Source: Octopus sinensis (taxonomy: Eukaryota). Taken from it: 27,051 nt of DNA. Within the stretch, counting starts at the first letter, position 1; every line of letters starts with the position of its first letter. A model generated the notes under the pieces. It ran no database searches and was not told the DNA's origin. It saw nothing but the letters and a program-made list of their open reading frames with translations. Made by a program: the position numbers and the translations under genes. The stretch spans positions 1 through 27,051 of the forward strand of contig NW_021836015.1 in the NCBI RefSeq assembly GCF_006345805.1, written 5' to 3'. Below are positions 431 through 26,384 of the stretch, piece after piece.

Positions 431-1051
431 GCAGACGAGATACCTATTTCTATTTCTTTACTACCCACAAGGGGCTAAACACAGAAGGGACAAACAAGGA
501 CAGACAAACGGATTAAGTCGATCATATCGACCCCAGTGCGTAACTGATACTTAATTTATTTACCCCGAAAGGATGAAAGGCAAAGTCGACCTCTGTGGAA
601 TTTGAACTCAGAACGTAGCGGCAGATAAAATACCTATTTCTTTACTACCCACAAGGGGCTAAACACAGAGAGGACAAACAAGGACAGACAAACAGATTAA
701 GTCGATTATATCGATCCCAGTGCGCAACTGGTACTTATTTAATCGATCCCGAAAGGTTGAAAGGCAAAGTCGACCTCAGTGGAATTTGAACTCAGAATGC
801 AACAACAGACGAAATACCTATTTCTTTATTACCCTCAAGGGGTTAAACATAGAGAGGACAAACAAGGACAGACAAACGGATTAAGTCGATTATATCGACC
901 CCAGTGCGTAACTGGTACTTAATTTATCGACCCCGAAAGGATGAAAGGCAAAGTCGACCTCGGCGGAATTTGAACTCGGAACGTAGCGGCAGACGAAATA
1001 CCGCTAAGCATTTCGCCCGGCGTGCTAACGATTCTGTCAGCTCGCCGCCTT
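431..1051 (-). mobile_element. tRNA-derived SINE (family 1), one head plus three tandem body units
   Basis: Minus strand starts AAGGCGGCGAGCTGACAGAATCGTTAGCACGCC (A-box-like) and has GTTCAAATTCC (B-box-like). The body contains GTCGACTTTGCCTTTCATCCTTTCGGGGTCGATAAATTAAGTACCAG. Units restart at TACC 441, 631, 815 and 999 (periods 190/184/184). Confidence 0.9.
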
Positions 1052-1224
1052 AATTATTAGCACGCCAGCATGCTAATGATTCCGTCAGCTCGCCGCCTTT
1101 ATATCATCCCAGAAATCAGAATAAAAGCTAAATGATCATGCTTGGAACCATATTGATGGCAGGTGAGCCAGACCAGAACCGATCTGGGTGAATCGAGTTC
1201 AGTCGTAGTCATATCGACACCGGC

Positions 1225-1552: not shown

Positions 1553-1946
1553 ATATATATTCTATATAATGTGTATGTATGTATTATATATGTATATGTA
1601 TATATATATATACACACATATGTAATTTAAATGGTCTTAGCATAGAATTGGCAAATAAACTCTAGGAATAATTGACTTAGTAAACATTCTGGGAGAATAT
1701 ATATATGTCGACTGTTCTCTAACCTAGTCAGCACTTACTCTTTCAACTTCTATTTATTATATCTTAAGTCTCACACACACGCCTACATATACACAGATGC
1801 ACGCACGCGCTGTATCAATTTTGATGTATATATATAGGGATGGTATTATTAAAATACCATCACGAGTGGCCAGCGAATTATCAGCCGTACAGGCAAATTA
1901 ATAAAATATATACATACAATATTGGATATGTATGTATTTATATATA

Positions 1947-2183
1947 CACAAGGGCACTACATGAGTACCTACATCGCTAAATTAGAAGTCAAAAATACTT
2001 CTGTACCACCGGTACCAAGTTGACCAGCATTTACTTGTTCTGACCCAGTAAAGGTAAGACATTATTATTGTTCACTGATATTTTTTCCTATCATGTCTGT
2101 AATAGATTTGTGACTATTCAGTGGTGCAGAAGTATTTTTGACTTCTAATTTAGCGATGTGAATACTCATGTAGTACCCTTGTG
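1947..2183. mobile_element. MITE with ~63 bp terminal inverted repeats and TA flanks (Tc1/mariner-type)
   Basis: Left arm CACAAGGGCACTACATGAGTACCTACATCGCTAAATTAGAAGTCAAAAATACTTCTGTACCAC is the reverse complement of the right arm with about 5 mismatches. TA at 1945-46 and 2184-85. Confidence 0.85.
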
Positions 2184-2257
2184 TATATATGTACAGAATG
2201 TATAAATAAGAGGCAGTTAGTTTGATAGCCCCGTGTGTATACGTTTAGCCCTAGATG

Positions 2258-2333
2258 TTCCTGCTGAAGACGATTGCACCTGGCGGGTTCATTTACTAGC
2301 TAAACTAAAATCAGAAACCAATTGGTCCAGGAA
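2258..2333 (+). ncRNA. Type I hammerhead ribozyme motif
   Basis: Helix I TTCCTG/CAGGAA; core CTGAAGA 2264-70; helix II GATT/AATC with a C.A mismatch at the closing position; GAAA 2314-17; palindromic helix III ACCAATTGGT; GTC with predicted cut after 2327. Confidence 0.75.
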
Positions 2334-2630
2334 ACTAGATGGTAAAATGTTTGTATTTTTTATTTCGTTCCTGTTGAATTTTATCCCTAATTTTTGTGGT
2401 TATAGAACCTAGCTGTTCTTTCTAGCGTGTTGAATCCTATGACTGGATTCCTCATGTGTTTAAATATACACTATATATATATATATCCATCTAAGAATCC
2501 ATAAGTCAGGAAAAATTGTCAGTAAAGTGGCTATATTAATCAGAGTGTACAGTATTGTATATCCATTACTGCCGATCTTACCGATCAGTTCGCACTATGC
2601 GGTCGCCATATTTCATTTCATAACTACCAA

Positions 2631-2711
2631 CTCTGAAGAGCGCAGGGTTACACAATCGGGTAGTTACCTAATGCTCCGTTGAATTCCGAGTGCGAAACCG
2701 ATCGGTAAGCT
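2631..2711 (+). ncRNA. Type I hammerhead motif with weak helix I
   Basis: CTGAAGA 2633-39; helix II GCGC/GTGC; GAAA 2694-97; palindromic helix III ACCGATCGGT; GTA with cut after 2707. Helix I has only 2 contiguous bp. Confidence 0.6.
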
Positions 2712-2758
2712 CTGCTGTAATGGATATATAATATCGTAGACTTCAATTAAATATATTA

Positions 2759-2825
<67 letters not shown>

Positions 2826-3196
2826 ATTATGATATTTATATATGGATATGTATATATATATACATACACAAATATGTAATTTAAATGGTCTTAGCATAGA
2901 ATTGCAAATAAACTCTAGGAATAATTGACTTAGTAAACAATTCTGGAGAATATATATATGTCGACTGTTCTCTAACTTAGTCAGCACTTACTCTTTCAAC
3001 TTCTATTTATTAGATCTTAAGTCTCACACACACCTACATATACACCAGATGCACGCACGCGCTGTATCAATTTTGAGTATAGATATAGGATGGTATTATT
3101 AAAATACCATCACGAGTGGCCAGCGAATTATCAGCCGTACGCAAATTAAAAAAATATATACATACAATATTGGATATGTATGTATTTTATATAATA

Positions 3197-3433
3197 AACA
3201 AGGGCACTACATGAGTACCTACATCGCTAAATTAGAAGTCAAAAAACTTCTGTACCACCGGTACCAAGTGACCAGCATTTACTTGTTCCTGACCCAGTAA
3301 AGGTAAGACATTATTATTGTTCACTGATATTTTTTCCTATCATGTCTGTAATAGATTTGTGACTATTCAGTGGTGCAGAAGTATTTTGGGACTTCTAATT
3401 TAGCGATGTGAATACTCATGTAGTACCCTTGTG
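3197..3433. mobile_element. Second copy of the same MITE (within the duplication)
   Basis: Same TIRs as 1947-2183. Confidence 0.8.
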
Positions 3434-3512
3434 TATATTGTACAGAATGTATAAATAAGAGGCAGTGAGTTTGTTTGGTAGCCCCGTGTGTATACGTTTT
3501 AGGCCCTAGATG

Positions 3513-3588
3513 TTCCTGCTGAAGACGATTTGCACCGGGCGGGTTCATTTACTAGCTAAACTAAAATCAGAAACCATTGGTCCAGGAA
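3513..3588 (+). ncRNA. Hammerhead motif, duplicate of 2258-2333
   Basis: CTGAAGA 3519-25; GAAA from 3570; helix III ACCATTGGT (one A fewer than copy 1); GTC with cut after 3582; helix I TTCCTG/CAGGAA. Confidence 0.7.
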
Positions 3589-3887
3589 ACTAGATGGTAA
3601 AATGTTTGTATTTTTTATTTCGTTCCTGTTGAATTTTATCCCTAATTTTTGTGGTTATAGAACCTAGCTGTTCTTTCTAGCGTGTTGAATCCTATGACTG
3701 GATTCCTCATGTGTTTAAATATACACTATATATATATATATCCATCTAAGAATCCATAAGTCAGGAAAAATTGTCAGTAAAGTGGCTATATTAATCAGAG
3801 TGTACAGTATTGTATATCCATTACTGCCGATCTTACCGATCAGTTTCGCACTATGGCGGTCGCCATATTTCATTTCATAACTACCAA

Positions 3888-3968
3888 CTCTGAAGAGCGC
3901 AGGGTTACACAATCGGGTAGTTACCTAATGCTCCGTTGAATTCCGAGTGCGAAACCGATCGGTAAGCT
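3888..3968 (+). ncRNA. Hammerhead motif, duplicate of 2631-2711
   Basis: CTGAAGA 3890-96; GAAACCGATCGGTA 3951-64. Confidence 0.55.
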
Positions 3969-4015
3969 CTGCTGTAATGGATATATAATATCGTAGACTT
4001 CAATTAAATATATTA

Positions 4016-4052
<37 letters not shown>

Positions 4053-4180
4053 CGATTAGATTATCGGATACTGTTATACATCGCTGGTCACAATGCGCTT
4101 TGCATCGTCTTAGTTTTAGAATGGTGCCACCCTACTGGGTAGGCGAGAAGGCCAACATTCTTCCTGATCGGAAAGGCTAC

Positions 4181-5444: not shown

Positions 5445-5735
5445 TTAAGATCAACAAGAAAAAGACTCCATCCAATAAAAGATAACTATCATTTAATGTA
5501 TACAGTATAAAGGTAAGAGCTAGTAACAGTTTCTTGCTGTGAAGACACGTGTCCAGGCAAATTTTTGTAACGCGTATAGTGTCTCCAAGCAATCTTCGAG
5601 TTCTGAGAGCAAGGCCGCTGGTACAAGAGAAATCACGAAGTAAAAAGGAGGAAACGGTAGATGCAAAAAGTGGAAGGGTGAATAGGAAAGGAAAAAGAAA
5701 GAATAGAAGAGAAAATCGCTGTTATGTCTCTGAGA
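5445..5735 (+). repeat. Same repeat, copy C
   Basis: See copy A; roughly 70% identity by eye. Confidence 0.8.
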
Positions 5736-5736
5736 T

Positions 5737-6112
5737 GAAATACCTATTTCTTTACTACCCACAAGGGGCTAAAAGCAGAGAGGACAAACAAGGACAGACA
5801 AACGGATTAAGTCGATTATATCGACCCCGAAAGGATGAAAGGCAAAGTCGACCTTGGCGGAATTTGAACTCAGAAATACCTATTTCTTTAAAACCCACAA
5901 GGGGCTAAACATAGAGGGGACAAACAAGGACAGACATAGGTATTAAGTCGATTACATCGACCCCAGTGCGAAACTGGTACTTAATTTATCGACCCCGAAA
6001 GGATGAAAGGCAAAGTCAACCTCGGCGGAATTTGAACTCACAACGTAACGACAGACGAAATACCGCTAAGCATTTCGCCCGGAATGCTAACGATTCTGCC
6101 AGATTACCGCTT
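5737..6112 (-). mobile_element. SINE family 1, head plus two body units (one internally deleted)
   Basis: Same consensus as 431-1051. The first unit lacks the segment between the two TATCGACCCC direct repeats. Confidence 0.9.
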
Positions 6113-6734
6113 TTAAGCGTTGCATTATATTGACTACATTTTATCCGTTCTACCAAAGTGGAAATCAAAAAGATGATGTGAATACTCTGACGAGATTCGA
6201 ACTGGAAACGATGAGGTATATCAACGAGTTTATCGTAAAGTTTCTAGAAATGTACTCGGCCTTTCACCACTTTACTCTCCAGAGGTTAAACTGCAGAGAT
6301 TCAGGCTGCACATCAGCCGCATTAATCTCACAAATCTTTGAGTGCGACTGATGAGTGCCACAGCCATTGATCTTCCTACTTCAATAACAACAAATAAAAG
6401 ATGGAAAAAGATAAGTAATTTTCGTTTTTGGATTTGGTTTGCAAGATTATTTATATGAGTTCGTGTGTTGAAGCATATTCTGTTATGTCTGGGGAGAGTC
6501 ATTCTCTGTGGAAATTTTACCGGCGAGTGTGTTAAATAATAAGGCACTAAAAGAGAATGACTCTCTCCAGACACAAGAGAAGTAATTTATTTGAACAAAA
6601 TGTCTGCCTGCCTCTCTCTCCCTCTGTCTATCTATCTATCTATCTCTTTCTTCTCTTCTTATGGATTGTACCAACATCGAAACTAAAAAATTTCTTTAAA
6701 ACCAAAAAACAAGAACAAAAACAGCACGATAGCA

Positions 6735-10545: not shown

Positions 10546-10687
10546 CCCCCCCACATACACTACAGCGCTCTTTCGGTTTCCGTCTAACAAATCCACTTAC
10601 TAGGCTTTTGTCTGCCACGCAGCATTCTGAACATTAACAACAACAATAATACCATTGTTCTCTATCCTTACCATCACCTATACCACT

Positions 10688-10926
10688 AAATACCTATTTC
10701 TTTACTACCCACAAGGGGCTAAAAACAAAGAGGACAAGCAAGGACAGACAAACGGATTAACTCGATTATATCGACCCTAGTGTGTAACTGATACTTATTT
10801 AATCGACCCCGAAAGGATGAAAGGCAAAGTCGACCTCGGCGGAATTCGAACTCACAACGTAACGGCAGACGAAATACCGCAAAGCATTTCGCCCGACGTG
10901 CTAACGTTTCTGCCAGATCACCGCCT
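10688..10926 (-). mobile_element. SINE family 1 monomer, full length
   Basis: Head at 10926 down to tail ...AAAGAAATAGGTATTT at 10688. Confidence 0.92.
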
Positions 10927-10994
10927 AAATACCATAGACACTACTAATAATGGCAGCAACCACACTACCATCAACACTAGCACCGGTACCATTT

Positions 10995-15086: not shown

Positions 15087-15350
15087 TTGAAAAACGTATG
15101 AACAGATTGGCAGGTACAGAGTAATGCCTCGATATACGAGGAGACCGTTCGTAAAACGAAAACTTGTAAAGCAGAGCAACAATTTCCCAAGGTAGCAATG
15201 TTATAAATCGTAATTCGTTCCCAGAAAAATATTTTACCTGTAAAATTTATAATACTCGTAAACAAATGGCAATAAAACAACAGCAGAATGTGAAGAATAT
15301 TTTATGTTAAGTAAAATGAATGTCAAGATCATTTATAACGGAAAAATATT

Positions 15351-15622
15351 CCTTTCTAGTCTAGGCACAAGGCCCGAGATTTTGGGGAAGGAGACCAGTC
15401 AATTAGATCGACCCCAGTACGCAACTGGTACTTAATTTATCAACCCCGAAAGTATGAAAGGCAAAGTCGACCTCAGCGGGATTCTAACTCAGAACATAAC
15501 GGCAGACGAAATACCTATTTCTTTACTACCCACAAGGGGCTAAACACAGAGGAGACAAAACAAGGACAGACAGACGGATTAAGTCAATTACATCGAACCC
15601 AGTGCGTAACTGGTACTTAATT
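15351..15622 (-). mobile_element. SINE family 1 headless dimer (tail A unit followed by tail B unit)
   Basis: Body consensus twice; junction GACGAAATACCTATTTC at about 15506-22; alternative tail CCTTTCTAGTCTAGGCACAAGG at 15351. Confidence 0.85.
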
Positions 15623-15924
15623 CATAGACAGGTACACGTTGATAGATGTATACATGTCCGTGTGTGCATGTAGACACGTGTACACAAGTATATATACACA
15701 GAAATGTGCTCGCAAAAAGAGGTGTATAAGCAATTTTATTAATATATCTCGAAATGGCAGCTTGCACAAAATTTTGCAAATGTATGCATATAGTATAGAT
15801 ATACATATACACGCGCATACATATAGATACACACACAGACACTCACATGTAACACATACATTCCAAATCCAGACAACTACACATATGCACACACACACAT
15901 GCATATGCATTTATCCACGCGGAA

Positions 15925-17790: not shown

Positions 17791-17856
17791 CATACTGTTA
17801 TTGCTTTTGCTGATTAAATTTCAACTAAATATAACATTTGAGCACTTGTTTTCTTT

Positions 17857-18750
17857 ATTCAAAACTCAGCCACGATCACAAGTTATGTCGATGATACAAA
17901 AGTCTCACAGGTAATACAGAATCCTGAAGACACTAAGCACCTGCAATGTGAGCTGAATGAAATATACAAGTGGACTGAAAAGAATAACATGCAGTTTAAT
18001 GCTGAAAAGTTTCAAGCCTTGTGCTATCAGCATGCAAAACTAAAGGCAATATCCATTCAGTACACTGGACCTGGAGGGATTGCAATCCCAGAAGCACAGT
18101 CAGTGCGAGACCTTGGCATTTACATGAGTAAAGATGCATTCTTCCAAGTGCATGTTGCTAAATTGGAAATGAAATATAGGTGGCTGACCGGATGGATTCT
18201 TACAACTTTTAGAACAAGAAATAAGGAAACCATGATGTTTCTCTGGAGGACACTTGGCCTAAGACACTTTGATTATTGCTCTCAGCTATGGTTACCAACA
18301 CTGAGGCAATCCAACAAAGATACACGAAGAAGATAGCCTCTATGCAGCATATAAGTTACTAGGAAAGACTCAAAAGATTAAGACTCTATTCCTCAGACCG
18401 TAGGCGAGAAAGATATGCCATAATATACATCTGGAAGATCCTGGAAGGACTTGTCCCAAACTTTGGCATCGAGAGTTACACAAATACTAGAACTGGGCAC
18501 CACTGCATAGTGCCAAGGATTCCAAATTTGCCATCAAGATATAGGACAAGATACTGCAATAGCCAAAGCTTCAGAGGTCCACAGCTCTTCAATATCCCCC
18601 CGAAGATGTCTTCAAAATAAAGATGGACCTCTCACTGTCAAGTGTCCCAAATGAGCCAACCTCGCAAGAGGAAATGCAGATGAGGGCATTCGTTAAGTAA
18701 ATTATGTGCCCCAGCATGGCCACAGTTCGTGAGCTGAAACTAGATACAAA
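17857..18750 (+). mobile_element. CR1/L2-group LINE 3' fragment (RT C-terminal half plus 3' tail), decayed
   Basis: ITSYVDDTK, WTEKNNMQFNAEKFQ, VRDLGIYMS, HFDYCSQLW, then after a frameshift/deletion ERLKRLRLYSSDRRRERYAIIYIWKILEGLVPN. Ends before (TA)n. Confidence 0.9.
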
Positions 18751-21070: not shown

Positions 21071-21111
<41 letters not shown>

Positions 21112-21318
21112 CCTTTCTACTGTTGGCACAAGGCCTCATATTTGTGGGGAGGGGACTAGTCGATTACATCGACTCCAGTGTTTTACTCGGATTTAATTTA
21201 TCGACCCTGAAAGGATGAAAGGCAATGTCAGCCTCGCTGGAATTTGAATTCGTAACGTAGCGGCGAACGAAACACCGCTAAGCATGTCGTCCAGTGTGCT
21301 AACGATTCTGCCAGCTCG
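21112..21318 (-). mobile_element. SINE family 1 with tail B, diverged
   Basis: Head CGAGCTGGCAGAATCGTTAGCAC, body consensus, tail ...TTGTGCCAACAGTAGAAAGG running into (ATT)n. Confidence 0.85.
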
Positions 21319-22197
21319 ACAGTTTTTTATAATAATAATAATAATAATATGATGATGATGACATAAGGATGACAACCATAATAATAATAATAATCATTAT
21401 TAATATAAAAGTGAAAGTGTTCTTTAAGTTAAATATAATTACATATAACACATATTTACTGATTTATCCTGTCATTTTTTATGGTGTTTTATTAGTTTAA
21501 TCACTGGTTTTGTTCAATGTTGTGCTGTGCTTACAAGTGAAATAAGATATGGAGATATGAGTGGTTGCATTCTATCAACGATTTCAAGGTCATTTTATCA
21601 TCGTATCTGTGCGTGGTAATATCATTTAAAAGGTTTCGTTCCGATTTCTTATAAGTGCTGGCTATAGAATTAGATAAGAATATGTGATATAGAGTTTCGC
21701 TAATTTTATTCACTTTCTTGTATTAGCTGAATCTACGAAGATTGTATGCTTCGTTTTGTTTTGTTCTTTTTCCACATCGGTAATTTTGGTTTCAAATTCC
21801 TGAGAAAGTTATTGTTAAATTTTATGAATTTGACGTTCCTAATTAACAAAAAAAAAAAAAATCCTTTCTTCAAAAGGTTGGAGTATTTATTAAAAAGGTG
21901 GGGCATTTCGCGTAGGTGGTATCTATGTATGTTTAAAATATTGTTCTTGTAGGTATAATTGTCAAACAAGAATGAGAATCAAGTTAGAATTTTCATAATA
22001 AATTGATTGGCATGAAACACTGAAGCTGAAATAAAATATTTCAGAGACAGAATGTCAACAATCTTGGTAAAATTGCCACACACGCACACTCTCACACACT
22101 CATGCACACACAAAAATGTGTATATATATATATATATATATATGGGCTCAGTGTGAGCAATCATCTGAAAGTTTTTTGTGCATTTTGATCTTGACAT

Positions 22198-22302
22198 AAG
22201 TTCCTTGCTTTTCCTGATGAGAAAGCGGCATAATGCACCCCTTATTCCTTCGCAATTAGGAATATGCAGTCTTCGAAACATATGTCGAAAATAAAGGAAT
22301 TT
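22198..22302 (+). ncRNA. Type I hammerhead ribozyme, canonical core
   Basis: Helix I TTTTC/GAAAA plus TTCCTT/AAGGAA; CTGATGA 22214-20; helix II closed G22221-C22274 (GAA/TTC, GCATA/TATGC); GAAA 22275-78; helix III ACATATGT palindrome; GTC with cut after 22286. Confidence 0.85.
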
Positions 22303-22492
22303 TGTTAATTCGTCGTTCAGCTCCATTTTTTCATATATTTATATTTTCAAAATAAACATACAAATTTCCACACGAAAGCACGTAATCTATGCCCTAGGCA
22401 CGTAACCTCAACCGTGTTTTTTTTATGTGAATTTGCTACCCAGGTATCGGTTAATTCGAATTATCCTTAATAAGATAATTCATTCAACTACT

Positions 22493-22534
<42 letters not shown>

Positions 22535-25405: not shown

Positions 25406-25650
25406 TATATGCATAAGGCAGATGTAGGACAAAATAATGCTGCCAGATCGAAACTTTTCACTCCATACATGGAAATATCTCCAGCAGGCTAGACCGAGAA
25501 CAGAGAAGAATGTATGTCAATAAAAAACCAGCCAGCGTCTTAGATTTCCTGATAATCTAATGCTGATAAGAGACTGTTTAGAAGAGGCTGAGAGAAGGCT
25601 GAAAGAATTATGGAGCTGAAGCAAAAACCTTCCGAGTGGTTATGCTTTTC

Positions 25651-26263
25651 TTTTCTACTTTAGGCACAAGGTGGTAAATTTGGAGGGAGGGGGCCTGTCG
25701 ATTACATCGACCCCAGTACTTAACTGGTACTTAATCTATCGAGCCCGAAAAGATGAAAAGCAAAGTTGACCTCGGCGGAATTTGAACTCAGAACTTAAAG
25801 ACAGACGAAATACTGCCAAGCATTTCACCCGGCGTGCTAACGTTTCTTATTTCTTTATTGCCACAAGGGGCTAAACATAGAGGGAACAAACAAGGAGAGA
25901 TAAAGGGATTAAGTTGATTACATCGACCCCAGTGTGTAACTGGTACTTAATTTATCGACCCCGAAAGGATGAAAGGCAAAGTCGACCTCGGCGGATTTTG
26001 AACTCAGAACATAAAAACAGACGAAATACCTATTTCTTTACTACCCACAAAGGGCTAAACACAGAGGGGACAAACAAGGACAGACACACAGATTAAATCG
26101 ATTACATCGACCCCAGTGCGTAACTGGTACTTATTTAATCGACCCCGAAAGGATGAAAGGCAAAGTCGACCTCGGCGGAATTTGAACTCAGAACATAACG
26201 GCAGACGAAATACGGCTACGCATTTCGCCCGGCGTGCTAACGTTTCTGCCAGTTCGCCGCCTT
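25651..26263 (-). mobile_element. SINE family 1 trimer (head, tail A, tail A, tail B)
   Basis: Three body units, head at 26263, junctions near 26030 and 25848, tail B at 25651. Confidence 0.9.
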
Positions 26264-26281
26264 AAATTTTGTAATATATTC

Positions 26282-26340
26282 TTTTCTAATCTAGGCACAA
26301 GGGCATAAATTTTTGGGGAGGGGGGGGGCAGTCGATTACA
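26282..26340 (-). mobile_element. SINE family 1 tail B fragment
   Basis: CTTTTCTAATCTAGGCACAAGG...GGGGCAGTCGATTACA. Confidence 0.65.
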
Positions 26341-26384
26341 GATTGTATTTGTAATGTGCGAGTTAGCTGGTTGATTATATATAT

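What the first reader, a model, noticed from the sequence alone, without database searches (positions are those of the whole stretch)
22198..22302. Apparently intact type I hammerhead ribozyme
Every canonical element is present: CUGAUGA, a G-C pair closing helix II, GAAA, an A-U/C-G helix III with the palindrome ACAUAUGU, and a GUC triplet. Helix I is 5 bp, a 2x2 internal loop, then 6-9 bp, and that loop could contact the helix II loop. It sits in a ~350 bp module between (TA)n tracts ending at 22143 and starting at 22497. This is the best candidate for a still-active self-cleaving RNA in the window.
Basis: partly seen in the sequence, partly recalled or inferred. Interest (0 to 1): 0.85.

Follow-up and report, generated by a model that had tools for sequence, protein, structure and literature searches.

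The report
Retrotransposon hammerhead ribozyme in octopus DNA
The motif is a real, sequence-intact hammerhead ribozyme, but it is the standard ribozyme carried in the terminal repeat of a Penelope-like retrotransposon, sitting here in a truncated dead copy that is one of many near-identical copies (at least 40 aligned, about 4,100 candidate matches) in an octopus genome, so it is ordinary rather than new.

Summary
At 22198-22302 (+) every hammerhead (HHR) core element and all three helices are present as described, with the predicted cut after C22286.

The motif is not a free-standing gene. Window 22144-22496 is a 353-bp, 5'-truncated 3' end of a dispersed retroelement. There were 4,108 first-look candidates in the 2.72-Gb genome, which appears to be Octopus sinensis, and all 40 scored copies are 95-97% identical. 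Longer copies continue upstream into an ORF whose two ends align to a ~700-aa protein family. [quoted passage not shown] Its motifs match the published 'Hydra' clade of Penelope-like elements (PLEs), which insert into (TA)n and always carry HHRs.

In eight independent relatives I found the same type I HHR in the flanking repeats, with compensatory changes in the helices. A covariance model built from those relatives alone recovers the candidate (17.8 bits, E~0.013). Rfam misses all of them.

Activity is untested. The minimum-energy fold is not the hammerhead. Helix III is only 2 bp plus a palindromic loop, which implies a dimer mechanism. Helix II is unusually long (54 nt).

Verdict: a new member of a known kind, of low to moderate interest.

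The parts
22144..22496 (+). 353-bp 5'-truncated 3'-terminal (pseudo-LTR) fragment of a Penelope-like retroelement. It differs from the family consensus at 11 of 354 positions.
   Evidence: 40 scored genomic copies, all 95-97% identical over positions 1-353; longer copies extend upstream, and all end ...CAACTACTCAAA + (TA)n; divergence from consensus.
22121..22143 (.). Upstream (TA)n tract, the target microsatellite into which the element inserted
   Evidence: (TA)n flanks are shared by most copies.
22497..22531 (.). Downstream (TA)n tract directly abutting the element's 3' end
22198..22213 (+). Helix I, 5' strand: 5 bp next to the core, a 2x2 internal loop, then 9 further pairs
   Evidence: constrained fold
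22214..22220 (+). Core C3-U4-G5-A6-U7-G8-A9 (CUGAUGA)
22221..22274 (+). Helix II, a 54-nt imperfect hairpin closed by G10.1-C11.1. It carries 3 substitutions relative to the family consensus (22236 T>C, 22239 T>C, 22270 C>T).
22275..22277 (+). Core G12-A13-A14
22278..22285 (+). Helix III, the palindrome ACAUAUGU. It forms 2 bp plus an AUAU loop in a monomer, or 8 intermolecular bp in a double hammerhead.
22286..22286 (+). C17; the predicted scissile bond is 3' of this base
   Evidence: by the hammerhead numbering rule
22287..22302 (+). Helix I, 3' strand

Best explanation
The motif is the type I hammerhead ribozyme of the terminal repeat (pseudo-LTR) of a Penelope-like retroelement (PLE) that inserts into (TA)n microsatellites. 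The element resembles the published 'Hydra' clade, and the genome appears to be Octopus sinensis.

Shown here:
- Window 22144-22496 is a 5'-truncated 3' end of this element, lying inside a (TA)n tract.
- The HHR is on the element's sense strand, about 600 nt after the ORF stop and 210 nt before the element's 3' end.
- It is part of the family consensus.

Inferred from the architecture and the literature:
- In tandem or full-length elements the sense transcript carries the HHR both upstream and downstream of the ORF.
- Because helix III is only 2 bp plus a palindromic tetraloop, two HHR copies pair through ACAUAUGU to form a double hammerhead.
- Each copy then cuts after its C17, trimming longer-than-unit PLE RNA to the unit used for target-primed reverse transcription.

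The window copy keeps every core base. It is nevertheless a dead-on-arrival truncated insertion without a partner copy nearby. Any cleavage of it would be incidental and is likely weak as a monomer.
For: Repeat family:
- 4,108 first-look candidates; 40 scored, all 95-97% identical over the whole 353 bp.
- Copies are 5'-truncated at different points (L017, L024, L025, L008, L009, L022). All share the same 3' end followed by (TA)n.
- Inverted 5'-truncated copies lie head-to-head upstream in seven loci.
- A tandem junction from the 3' end into the 5' end and ORF start is seen in L002 and L029.

Coding part:
- The C-terminal ORF aligns to residues 566-681 of the 690-aa protein P0113 (E 4e-19).
- The N-terminus aligns to residues 3-119 (E 2e-10).
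- The P0113 family has more than 1,110 members of about 700 aa.
- Its conserved motifs are RWR, ADKT, YRDDG, CNCRx4C, a GIY-YIG-like block without CCHH, CxxC-E, N and CxH.
- These are the descriptors of the Hydra clade in PMC8557442 section 11. That section also states (TA)n insertion and universal HHRs.
- The AlphaFold model of P0113 has pLDDT 92. Its best PDB match is telomerase TERT, 3du5_A, E 1.9e-8.

HHR:
- The consensus of 34 copies carries the intact motif.
- The descriptor is unique in the window, with 0.01-0.06 hits expected by chance.
- Eight independent relatives carry a type I HHR with the same GAA-ACA..UGU-H helix III in both flanking repeats, followed by a short tail and (TA)n.
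- In those relatives 94% of cells are paired and 9 of 13 pairs have compensatory changes.
- Covariance model R1, built from the relatives only, matches 22207-22293 end to end (17.8 bits, E 0.013). In 97 kb of other octopus loci it finds almost only this family.

Dimer:
- The double hammerhead scores -52.0 kcal/mol, against -40.2 for two monomer hammerheads.
- Short palindromic helix III, dimer action and low in-vitro activity of PLE HHRs are described in PMC4209133.
Against: - No Rfam hammerhead model matches, even at E<=10. This test is weak, because Rfam also misses all eight HHRs of the relatives.
- The nearest-neighbour MFE (-26.1 kcal/mol) excludes the hammerhead (-18.5). GCUUUUC pairs with GAAAGC and sequesters the core. 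The relatives show gaps of 0.5-7.9 kcal/mol, so the candidate's 6.7-7.6 is at the high end but not outside the range.
- Helix II (54 nt) is far longer than the 4-8 bp typical of metazoan and PLE HHRs.
- The CxCX5C linker of the Hydra clade is replaced by an Asn-rich low-complexity stretch in the octopus ORF.
- Individual copies carry random hits in core bases (L002 U4>C, L014 G5>A, L026 inverted copy C17>G). There is therefore no sign of selection on inserted copies.
- No RNA or cleavage data were available.
Confidence: 0.85

Rival explanations
1. The module is a non-LTR 'retrozyme'. This would be a short non-coding HHR-bearing repeat that is transcribed, self-cleaves, is circularised by a tRNA ligase, and spreads as a small circular RNA, using PLE proteins in trans.
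For: The module is about 350 bp, AT-rich, and carries a type I HHR. That is the size class described for metazoan retrozymes (PMC7229834). A 2026 preprint argues that animal retrozymes derive from PLE pLTRs. An internally deleted derivative exists in L002, with the 5' ~590 nt joined to the 3' end.
Against: The window copy is single, not a tandem array, and no second copy lies within 27 kb. The 353-bp boundary is only this copy's truncation point. Other copies run continuously upstream for more than 1.5 kb into an ORF. Different copies are truncated at different points, which is the signature of abortive reverse transcription and not of a unit-length circle.
Confidence: 0.07
2. This is a chance or decayed hammerhead look-alike. 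The sequence fits the consensus by accident, or descends from a ribozyme that no longer folds. The RNA instead adopts the more stable non-hammerhead fold and never cleaves.
For: The MFE fold is 7-8 kcal/mol more stable than the hammerhead fold, and P(HHR-compatible) is about 1e-5 to 1e-6 in the nearest-neighbour ensemble. There is no Rfam hit. Helix II is atypically long. PLE min-HHRs have shown only low activity in vitro (PMC4209133).
Against: Chance expectation is 0.01-0.06 per window. The motif is at the homologous place and strand in eight related elements, whose helices covary. A model from the relatives finds it. At least four other octopus HHR-like motifs next to (TA)n also have 45-51-nt helix II inserts, so the long helix II is a recurring feature, not decay. 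The energy gap lies within the range of the relatives.
Confidence: 0.08

Closest known systems
Hammerhead ribozymes in the pseudo-LTRs of Penelope-like elements (Cervera & De la Pena 2014, PMC4209133)
   Same: Type I topology. Sense strand of the element's terminal repeat. Very short helix III with a palindromic loop, implying dimeric action. G10.1-C11.1 closing pair. Thousands of mostly solitary, truncated copies per genome. Pairs of motifs on opposite strands arising from inverted truncated copies.
   Different: Helix II here is a 54-nt imperfect hairpin, against 6-8 bp. Helix I is long (5 + 9 bp around an internal loop), against 4-5 bp. A real 2-bp helix III plus tetraloop is present, so it is closer to the 'canonical' than to the 'minimal' variant.
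Hydra clade of C-terminal-EN+ PLEs (Craig et al. 2021, PMC8557442)
   Same: Insertion into (TA)n. An HHR is present. DKT instead of DKG. An RW motif near the N-terminus. An EN domain without CCHH, with CxxC and CxH flanking the conserved E and N. Found in aquatic invertebrates including Mollusca.
   Different: The CxCX5C linker is replaced by an Asn-rich low-complexity stretch in the octopus copies examined. The 3' UTR is longer: the HHR lies about 600 nt after the stop, against 64-294 nt in the relatives I examined. Clade membership was judged from motifs and pairwise alignments, not from a phylogeny.
Amphibian satellite / axolotl retrozyme HHRs and Schistosoma Sm-alpha HHRs (PMC7229834)
   Same: Type I HHRs of metazoan repeats. 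Weak helix III with a palindromic tetraloop. More efficient as dimers.
   Different: Those sit in short tandem non-coding repeats or a SINE, with a 4-bp helix II and defined loop 1-loop 2 contacts. This one is in an ORF-bearing PLE family, in a single truncated copy, with a long helix II.

Membership tests
Hammerhead ribozyme, type I | Conserved core C3 U4 G5 A6 N7 G8 A9 / G12 A13 A14 / A15.1-U16.1 / H17 (not G) | tested here: met
   Read and captured by the descriptor. All positions are canonical, and H17 = C22286.
Hammerhead ribozyme, type I | Three helices around the core, with helix I open-ended and helix II closed by G10.1-C11.1 | tested here: met
   Helix I is 5 + 9 bp, helix II is closed by G22221-C22274, and helix III is 2 bp plus AUAU.
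Hammerhead ribozyme, type I | Match to the curated Rfam hammerhead covariance models | tested here: not met
   No hammerhead family matched at gathering score or at E<=10. The test is insensitive for this class: the same library found none of the eight HHRs in related PLEs.
Hammerhead ribozyme, type I | Match to a covariance model of HHRs from related elements (model built without the candidate) | tested here: met
   Model R1 hits 22207-22293, model positions 1-52, 17.8 bits, E about 0.013. The calibration is rough.
Hammerhead ribozyme, type I | Helices supported by compensatory changes | tested here: inconclusive
   Within the octopus family the copies are 95-97% identical and uninformative. 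Across eight relatives, 9 of 13 pairs show compensatory changes, but those motifs were partly selected by a pairing descriptor.
Hammerhead ribozyme, type I | Helix I / helix II tertiary contact | tested here: inconclusive
   An internal loop lies 5 bp into helix I, and bulges lie 4-7 bp into helix II. The terminal loop of helix II is too far away.
Hammerhead ribozyme, type I | Mg2+-dependent site-specific self-cleavage giving 2',3'-cyclic phosphate and 5'-OH ends | not testable with these tools
   No RNA or biochemical data are available.
Penelope-like element, Hydra-type | Reverse transcriptase related to telomerase RT | tested here: inconclusive
   Met for the relative P0113: pLDDT 92, top PDB hits are TERT, and a YRDDG motif is present.
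Penelope-like element, Hydra-type | C-terminal GIY-YIG-type EN without CCHH, with CxxC and CxH around the conserved E and N | tested here: met
   The ORF end reads ...TIYQCKISS..FFYIGATSSKLAQRISNHYSTF...CDICYSE...LIN...YRCMHW. It aligns to the P0113 EN region. Pfam itself gives no hit.
Penelope-like element, Hydra-type | DKT motif and an RW(K) motif in the N-terminal region | tested here: met
   The L002 tandem copy reads ...NRIRWLAFF... and ...QSDKTRNT..., aligned to P0113.
Penelope-like element, Hydra-type | CxCX5C linker before the EN domain | tested here: not met
   The octopus copies have an Asn-rich low-complexity stretch there. The relatives do have the linker.
Penelope-like element, Hydra-type | Partial tandems (pseudo-LTRs), inverted 5'-truncated copies, variable 5' truncation, insertion into (TA)n | tested here: met
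Metazoan non-LTR retrozyme | Short (150-450 bp) non-coding unit in head-to-tail tandem arrays, each unit with an HHR | tested here: not met
   There is a single copy at this locus. The family continues into an ORF.

The most novel reading that the evidence does not exclude
Octopus (perhaps cephalopod) PLE hammerheads form a lineage-specific variant. In this variant helix II has grown into a 45-54-nt structured arm. In this family, a competing hairpin (GCUUUUC with GAAAGC) also sequesters the CUGAUGA box. Together these could act as a switch or protein-binding platform that gates self-cleavage, for example allowing it only in multimeric or RT-bound RNA.
Probability: 0.12. Interest if true: 0.45.

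Novelty: new member of a known kind. Interest (0 to 1): 0.25.

Why it matters
The finding adds cephalopods to the animals in which PLE-borne hammerheads are documented. I found no paper reporting octopus HHRs.

It also shows that a (TA)n-targeting, Hydra-like PLE family has been recently active in an octopus genome, since copies are only about 2-3% from consensus.

Practically, the curated Rfam hammerhead models miss this whole class, while a small clade-specific model finds it. That matters for annotating ribozymes in invertebrate genomes.

The finding does not reveal a new ribozyme class or a host function.

Tried and rejected
- Rfam at gathering and at E<=10 gave no hammerhead hit. It was equally blind to the relatives.
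- Pfam and NCBIfam on the octopus ORF and on P0113/P0022 gave nothing significant.
- A PDB sequence search with P0113 gave nothing. Only the fold search gave TERT.
- The fetch from genomes and the genome search were closed after the first genome search. I therefore could not walk upstream to the RT domain of the octopus element, count copies properly, or collect diverged subfamilies for covariation.
- The look-up of encoding contigs for the O. sinensis protein P0001 found nothing on record.
- The supplements of PMC8557442 are not held, so I could not check whether an octopus Hydra family is already listed there.
- A tRNA-derived SINE, like Schistosoma Sm-alpha, was considered and dropped. The family has an ORF and no tRNA-like head.
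- The constrained-fold comparisons for three extra octopus motifs (win2264, L028m, L010m) used badly trimmed helix I ends and should be ignored.

Full report
**The observation.**
- CUGAUGA is at 22214-22220.
- A G-C pair (G22221-C22274) closes helix II.
- GAA is at 22275-22277.
- The palindrome ACAUAUGU is at 22278-22285, giving A15.1-U16.1 and C15.2-G16.2 around an AUAU loop.
- C17 is C22286.
- Helix I has 5 bp, a 2x2 internal loop, and 9 further pairs.

The (TA)n tracts end at 22143 and begin at 22497 as stated. A hand-written RNAmotif-style descriptor finds this site and no other in the window. Across 300 dinucleotide-preserving shuffles it gives 0.063 (loose) or 0.01 (strict) hits per window.

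Two qualifications apply:
- Helix II is a 54-nt imperfect hairpin. Its terminal loop is too far from the core to be the partner of the helix I internal loop.
- The minimum-free-energy fold of the 105 nt (-26.1 kcal/mol, z -2.7) is not the hammerhead. GCUUUUC pairs with GAAAGC and loops out the CUGAUGA box. The hammerhead-constrained fold scores -18.5 kcal/mol.

**What the module is.** The 353 bp between the (TA)n tracts is a dispersed repeat. One search of the window's own 2.72-Gb assembly gave 4,108 first-look candidates. All 40 that were scored were 95-97% identical over the whole 353 bp.

A protein hit named 'Octopus sinensis' lies on a contig whose length (30,097,204) equals that of contig C22 of this assembly. 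The genome is therefore very probably O. sinensis.

The flanks of 29 other copies show the following:
- The 3' end is constant (...CAACTACTCAAA) and is followed by (TA)n.
- The 5' end is variable. Some copies stop where the window copy does, others 60-460 bp further upstream, and four continue beyond the 1.5 kb of flank available.
- Seven loci carry an inverted, 5'-truncated copy head-to-head just upstream.
- In L002 and L029 the 3' end runs directly into another sequence that opens an ORF after about 50 nt. This is a head-to-tail junction.

Variable 5' truncation, partial tandems, inverted truncated partners and microsatellite targets are the insertion pattern described for Penelope-like elements (PMC8557442).

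**The coding part.** Upstream of the module, long copies carry the end of an ORF (L030 34-966). Its last ~120 residues align to residues 566-681 of a 690-aa protein, P0113 (34% identity, E 4e-19). The ORF start at the tandem junction aligns to residues 3-119 of the same protein (E 2e-10).

P0113 belongs to a family of more than 1,110 proteins of about 700 aa, mostly on 2.3-3 kb contigs from marine samples, plus a bryozoan chromosome. The family alignment shows RWR, ADKT, YRDDG, CNCRx4C, a GIY-YIG-like block without CCHH, CxxC next to an invariant E, an invariant N, and CxH. These are, point for point, the descriptors that Craig et al. give for their 'Hydra' clade of PLEs. That paper also states that almost all families insert into (TA)n and that canonical HHRs are readily detected.

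Sequence libraries (Pfam, NCBIfam, PDB sequences) do not recognise the protein. An AlphaFold model from the alignment is confident (pLDDT 92.2). Its best structural matches are telomerase catalytic subunits: 3du5_A at E 1.9e-8, then Tetrahymena and Candida TERT. This is what is expected of a PLE reverse transcriptase.

The octopus copies have DKT, RW, CxxC-E, N and CxH. They have an Asn-rich low-complexity stretch where the CxCX5C linker should be.

**Is the hammerhead part of that element type?** I fetched contigs for eight members of the protein family and scanned them. Every one carries a type I hammerhead on the sense strand.
- The HHR lies 64-294 nt after the stop codon.
- Where the upstream repeat is present, the HHR appears again upstream of the ORF.
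- In several contigs it is followed by a short tail and (TA)n.
- All share the helix III start A15.1-C15.2-A / U-G16.2-U16.1 around a near-palindromic centre. The octopus ACAUAUGU has the same start.

On an alignment of the eight, 94% of cells pair, against 67% in shuffles. Nine of 13 pairs show changes on both sides. The covariation score is 0.71, against 0.20 in shuffles and 0.05-0.13 in slid controls. One caveat is that a descriptor requiring pairing helped to find them.

Rfam detects none of these eight either, so its silence on the candidate says little.

A covariance model built from the eight relatives alone (R1) matches the candidate over the full model, treating the helix II interior as a local insertion (22207-22293, 17.8 bits, E about 0.013). 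In 97 kb of other octopus loci the same model finds the family's copies plus three other motifs. Two of these three have long helix II inserts and lie 35-105 nt upstream of a (TA)n tract.

**State of this copy and of the family.** The consensus of 34 aligned copies carries the intact motif. The window copy differs from consensus at 11 of 354 positions; the mean copy differs at 6.2.

Three of the window copy's differences fall within the HHR, all in helix II (22236, 22239, 22270). None touches the core or helices I and III.

Other copies have scattered hits in core positions: U4>C in L002, G5>A in L014, and C17>G in the inverted copy of L026. The rate is about the same as elsewhere in the module. 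Inserted copies are therefore decaying neutrally, and the motif is maintained only in the source elements.

**How it most likely works.** Steps shown:
- sense-strand position in the terminal repeat;
- a palindromic helix III;
- presence in both repeats of related elements.

Steps inferred:
- Two copies on longer-than-unit transcripts, or on separate transcripts, pair through ACAUAUGU to form a double hammerhead.
- Each copy then cuts after its C17, releasing unit-length RNA for reverse transcription.

In the nearest-neighbour model the double hammerhead of the consensus scores -52.0 kcal/mol. Two monomer hammerheads score -40.2, and two monomer MFE folds score -53.6. Dimerisation therefore removes most of the energetic handicap.

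The gap between MFE and hammerhead fold is 6.7-7.6 kcal/mol for the candidate and 0.5-7.9 for the relatives.

PLE min-HHRs showed no cleavage as monomers and low cleavage as dimers in vitro (PMC4209133). Invertebrate HHRs with a 2-bp helix III and tetraloop can be efficient (PMC7229834). Activity of this one is therefore open.

**Comparison and novelty.** The motif works like, and by the tests above belongs with, the PLE pseudo-LTR hammerheads. The element fits the Hydra-type description except for the linker. It is not a retrozyme at this locus, because it is a single copy and the family is ORF-bearing.

What is unusual is the long helix II. It recurs in at least five octopus HHR-like motifs (45-54 nt), against 12-25 nt in the non-octopus relatives. 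I found no paper reporting octopus hammerheads.

This is a new member of a known kind, with a possible lineage-specific variant that is worth a modest follow-up.

The element is a retrotransposon, and no full-length consensus was built.

Noticed in passing
window 1620-4055 (HHR-like motifs at 2257-2334, 2631-2709, 3512-3589, 3888-3966, all +): Two head-to-tail units (1620-2876 and 2877-4055, 97% identical), each ending in (TA)n and unrelated in sequence to the finding's family. Each unit holds two hammerhead-like motifs with perfectly palindromic helix III (ACCAAUUGGU and ACCGAUCGGU) and 46-nt-class helix II inserts. Model R1 scores them 16 and 20 bits (E 0.04 and 0.003), the second above the finding itself. 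The 2264/3519 motif has a 6-bp helix I. The 2633/3890 motif has only about 2 bp of helix I, and an upstream inverted repeat covers its 3' half. Being in tandem, these may be better placed for dimeric cleavage than the finding.
   Followed up: partly
L028 1143-1234 (-), L010 2008-2087 (-), L025 62-102 (-): Three further hammerhead motifs of other families lie in the flanks of unrelated octopus loci (27.6, 19.5 and 15 bits with R1). The first two have 45-51-nt helix II inserts and lie 35-105 nt upstream of a (TA)n tract. The third is a classic minimal HHR with no helix III loop. This suggests many (TA)n-targeting PLE lineages in this genome.
   Followed up: partly
window 22207-22226: GCUUUUC (helix I 5' strand) is complementary both to GAAAAU (helix I 3' strand) and to GAAAGC (helix II 5' strand). 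The second pairing forms a hairpin with CUGAUGA in its loop, and this drives the non-hammerhead MFE. It is present in the family consensus too. It could be a conformational switch or an accident.
   Followed up: partly
L030 34-966 and the equivalent region of L004, L014, L028: Between the RT-proximal part and the GIY-YIG-like domain, the octopus ORF has a ~130-residue Asn/Ser/Ile-rich low-complexity stretch. Related proteins have a CxCX5C zinc-finger-like linker at this position. Many copies also have frameshifts and stops there.
   Followed up: no
L002 (reverse-complemented to the element's + strand) 1854-2540: The copy downstream of a tandem junction has its first ~590 nt (5' end plus ORF start) joined directly to the 3' part of the module, from inside the HHR onward. 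It is an internally deleted, possibly non-autonomous derivative.
   Followed up: no
window 441-1132, 5733-6194, 10683-10929, 15350-15645, 21111-21309, 25621-26344: A ~184-bp unit occurs in short tandem runs and as dispersed copies (families D11, D12, D18, D20), at 60-95% identity. It looks like an abundant SINE-like or satellite repeat of this genome.
   Followed up: no
window 17842-18336 (+): A 164-codon open frame contains ...SYVDDTKV... followed by ...MQFNAEKFQAL.... It looks like a fragment of a LINE-type reverse transcriptase, unrelated to the PLE.
   Followed up: no
L031-L047 (relatives) and the window: The Rfam 15 hammerhead models returned no hit, even at E<=1, for any of the eight clear type I HHRs of Hydra-type PLEs. 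The only 'significant' hits there were microRNA models matching TA/CA microsatellites, which are false positives.
   Followed up: yes
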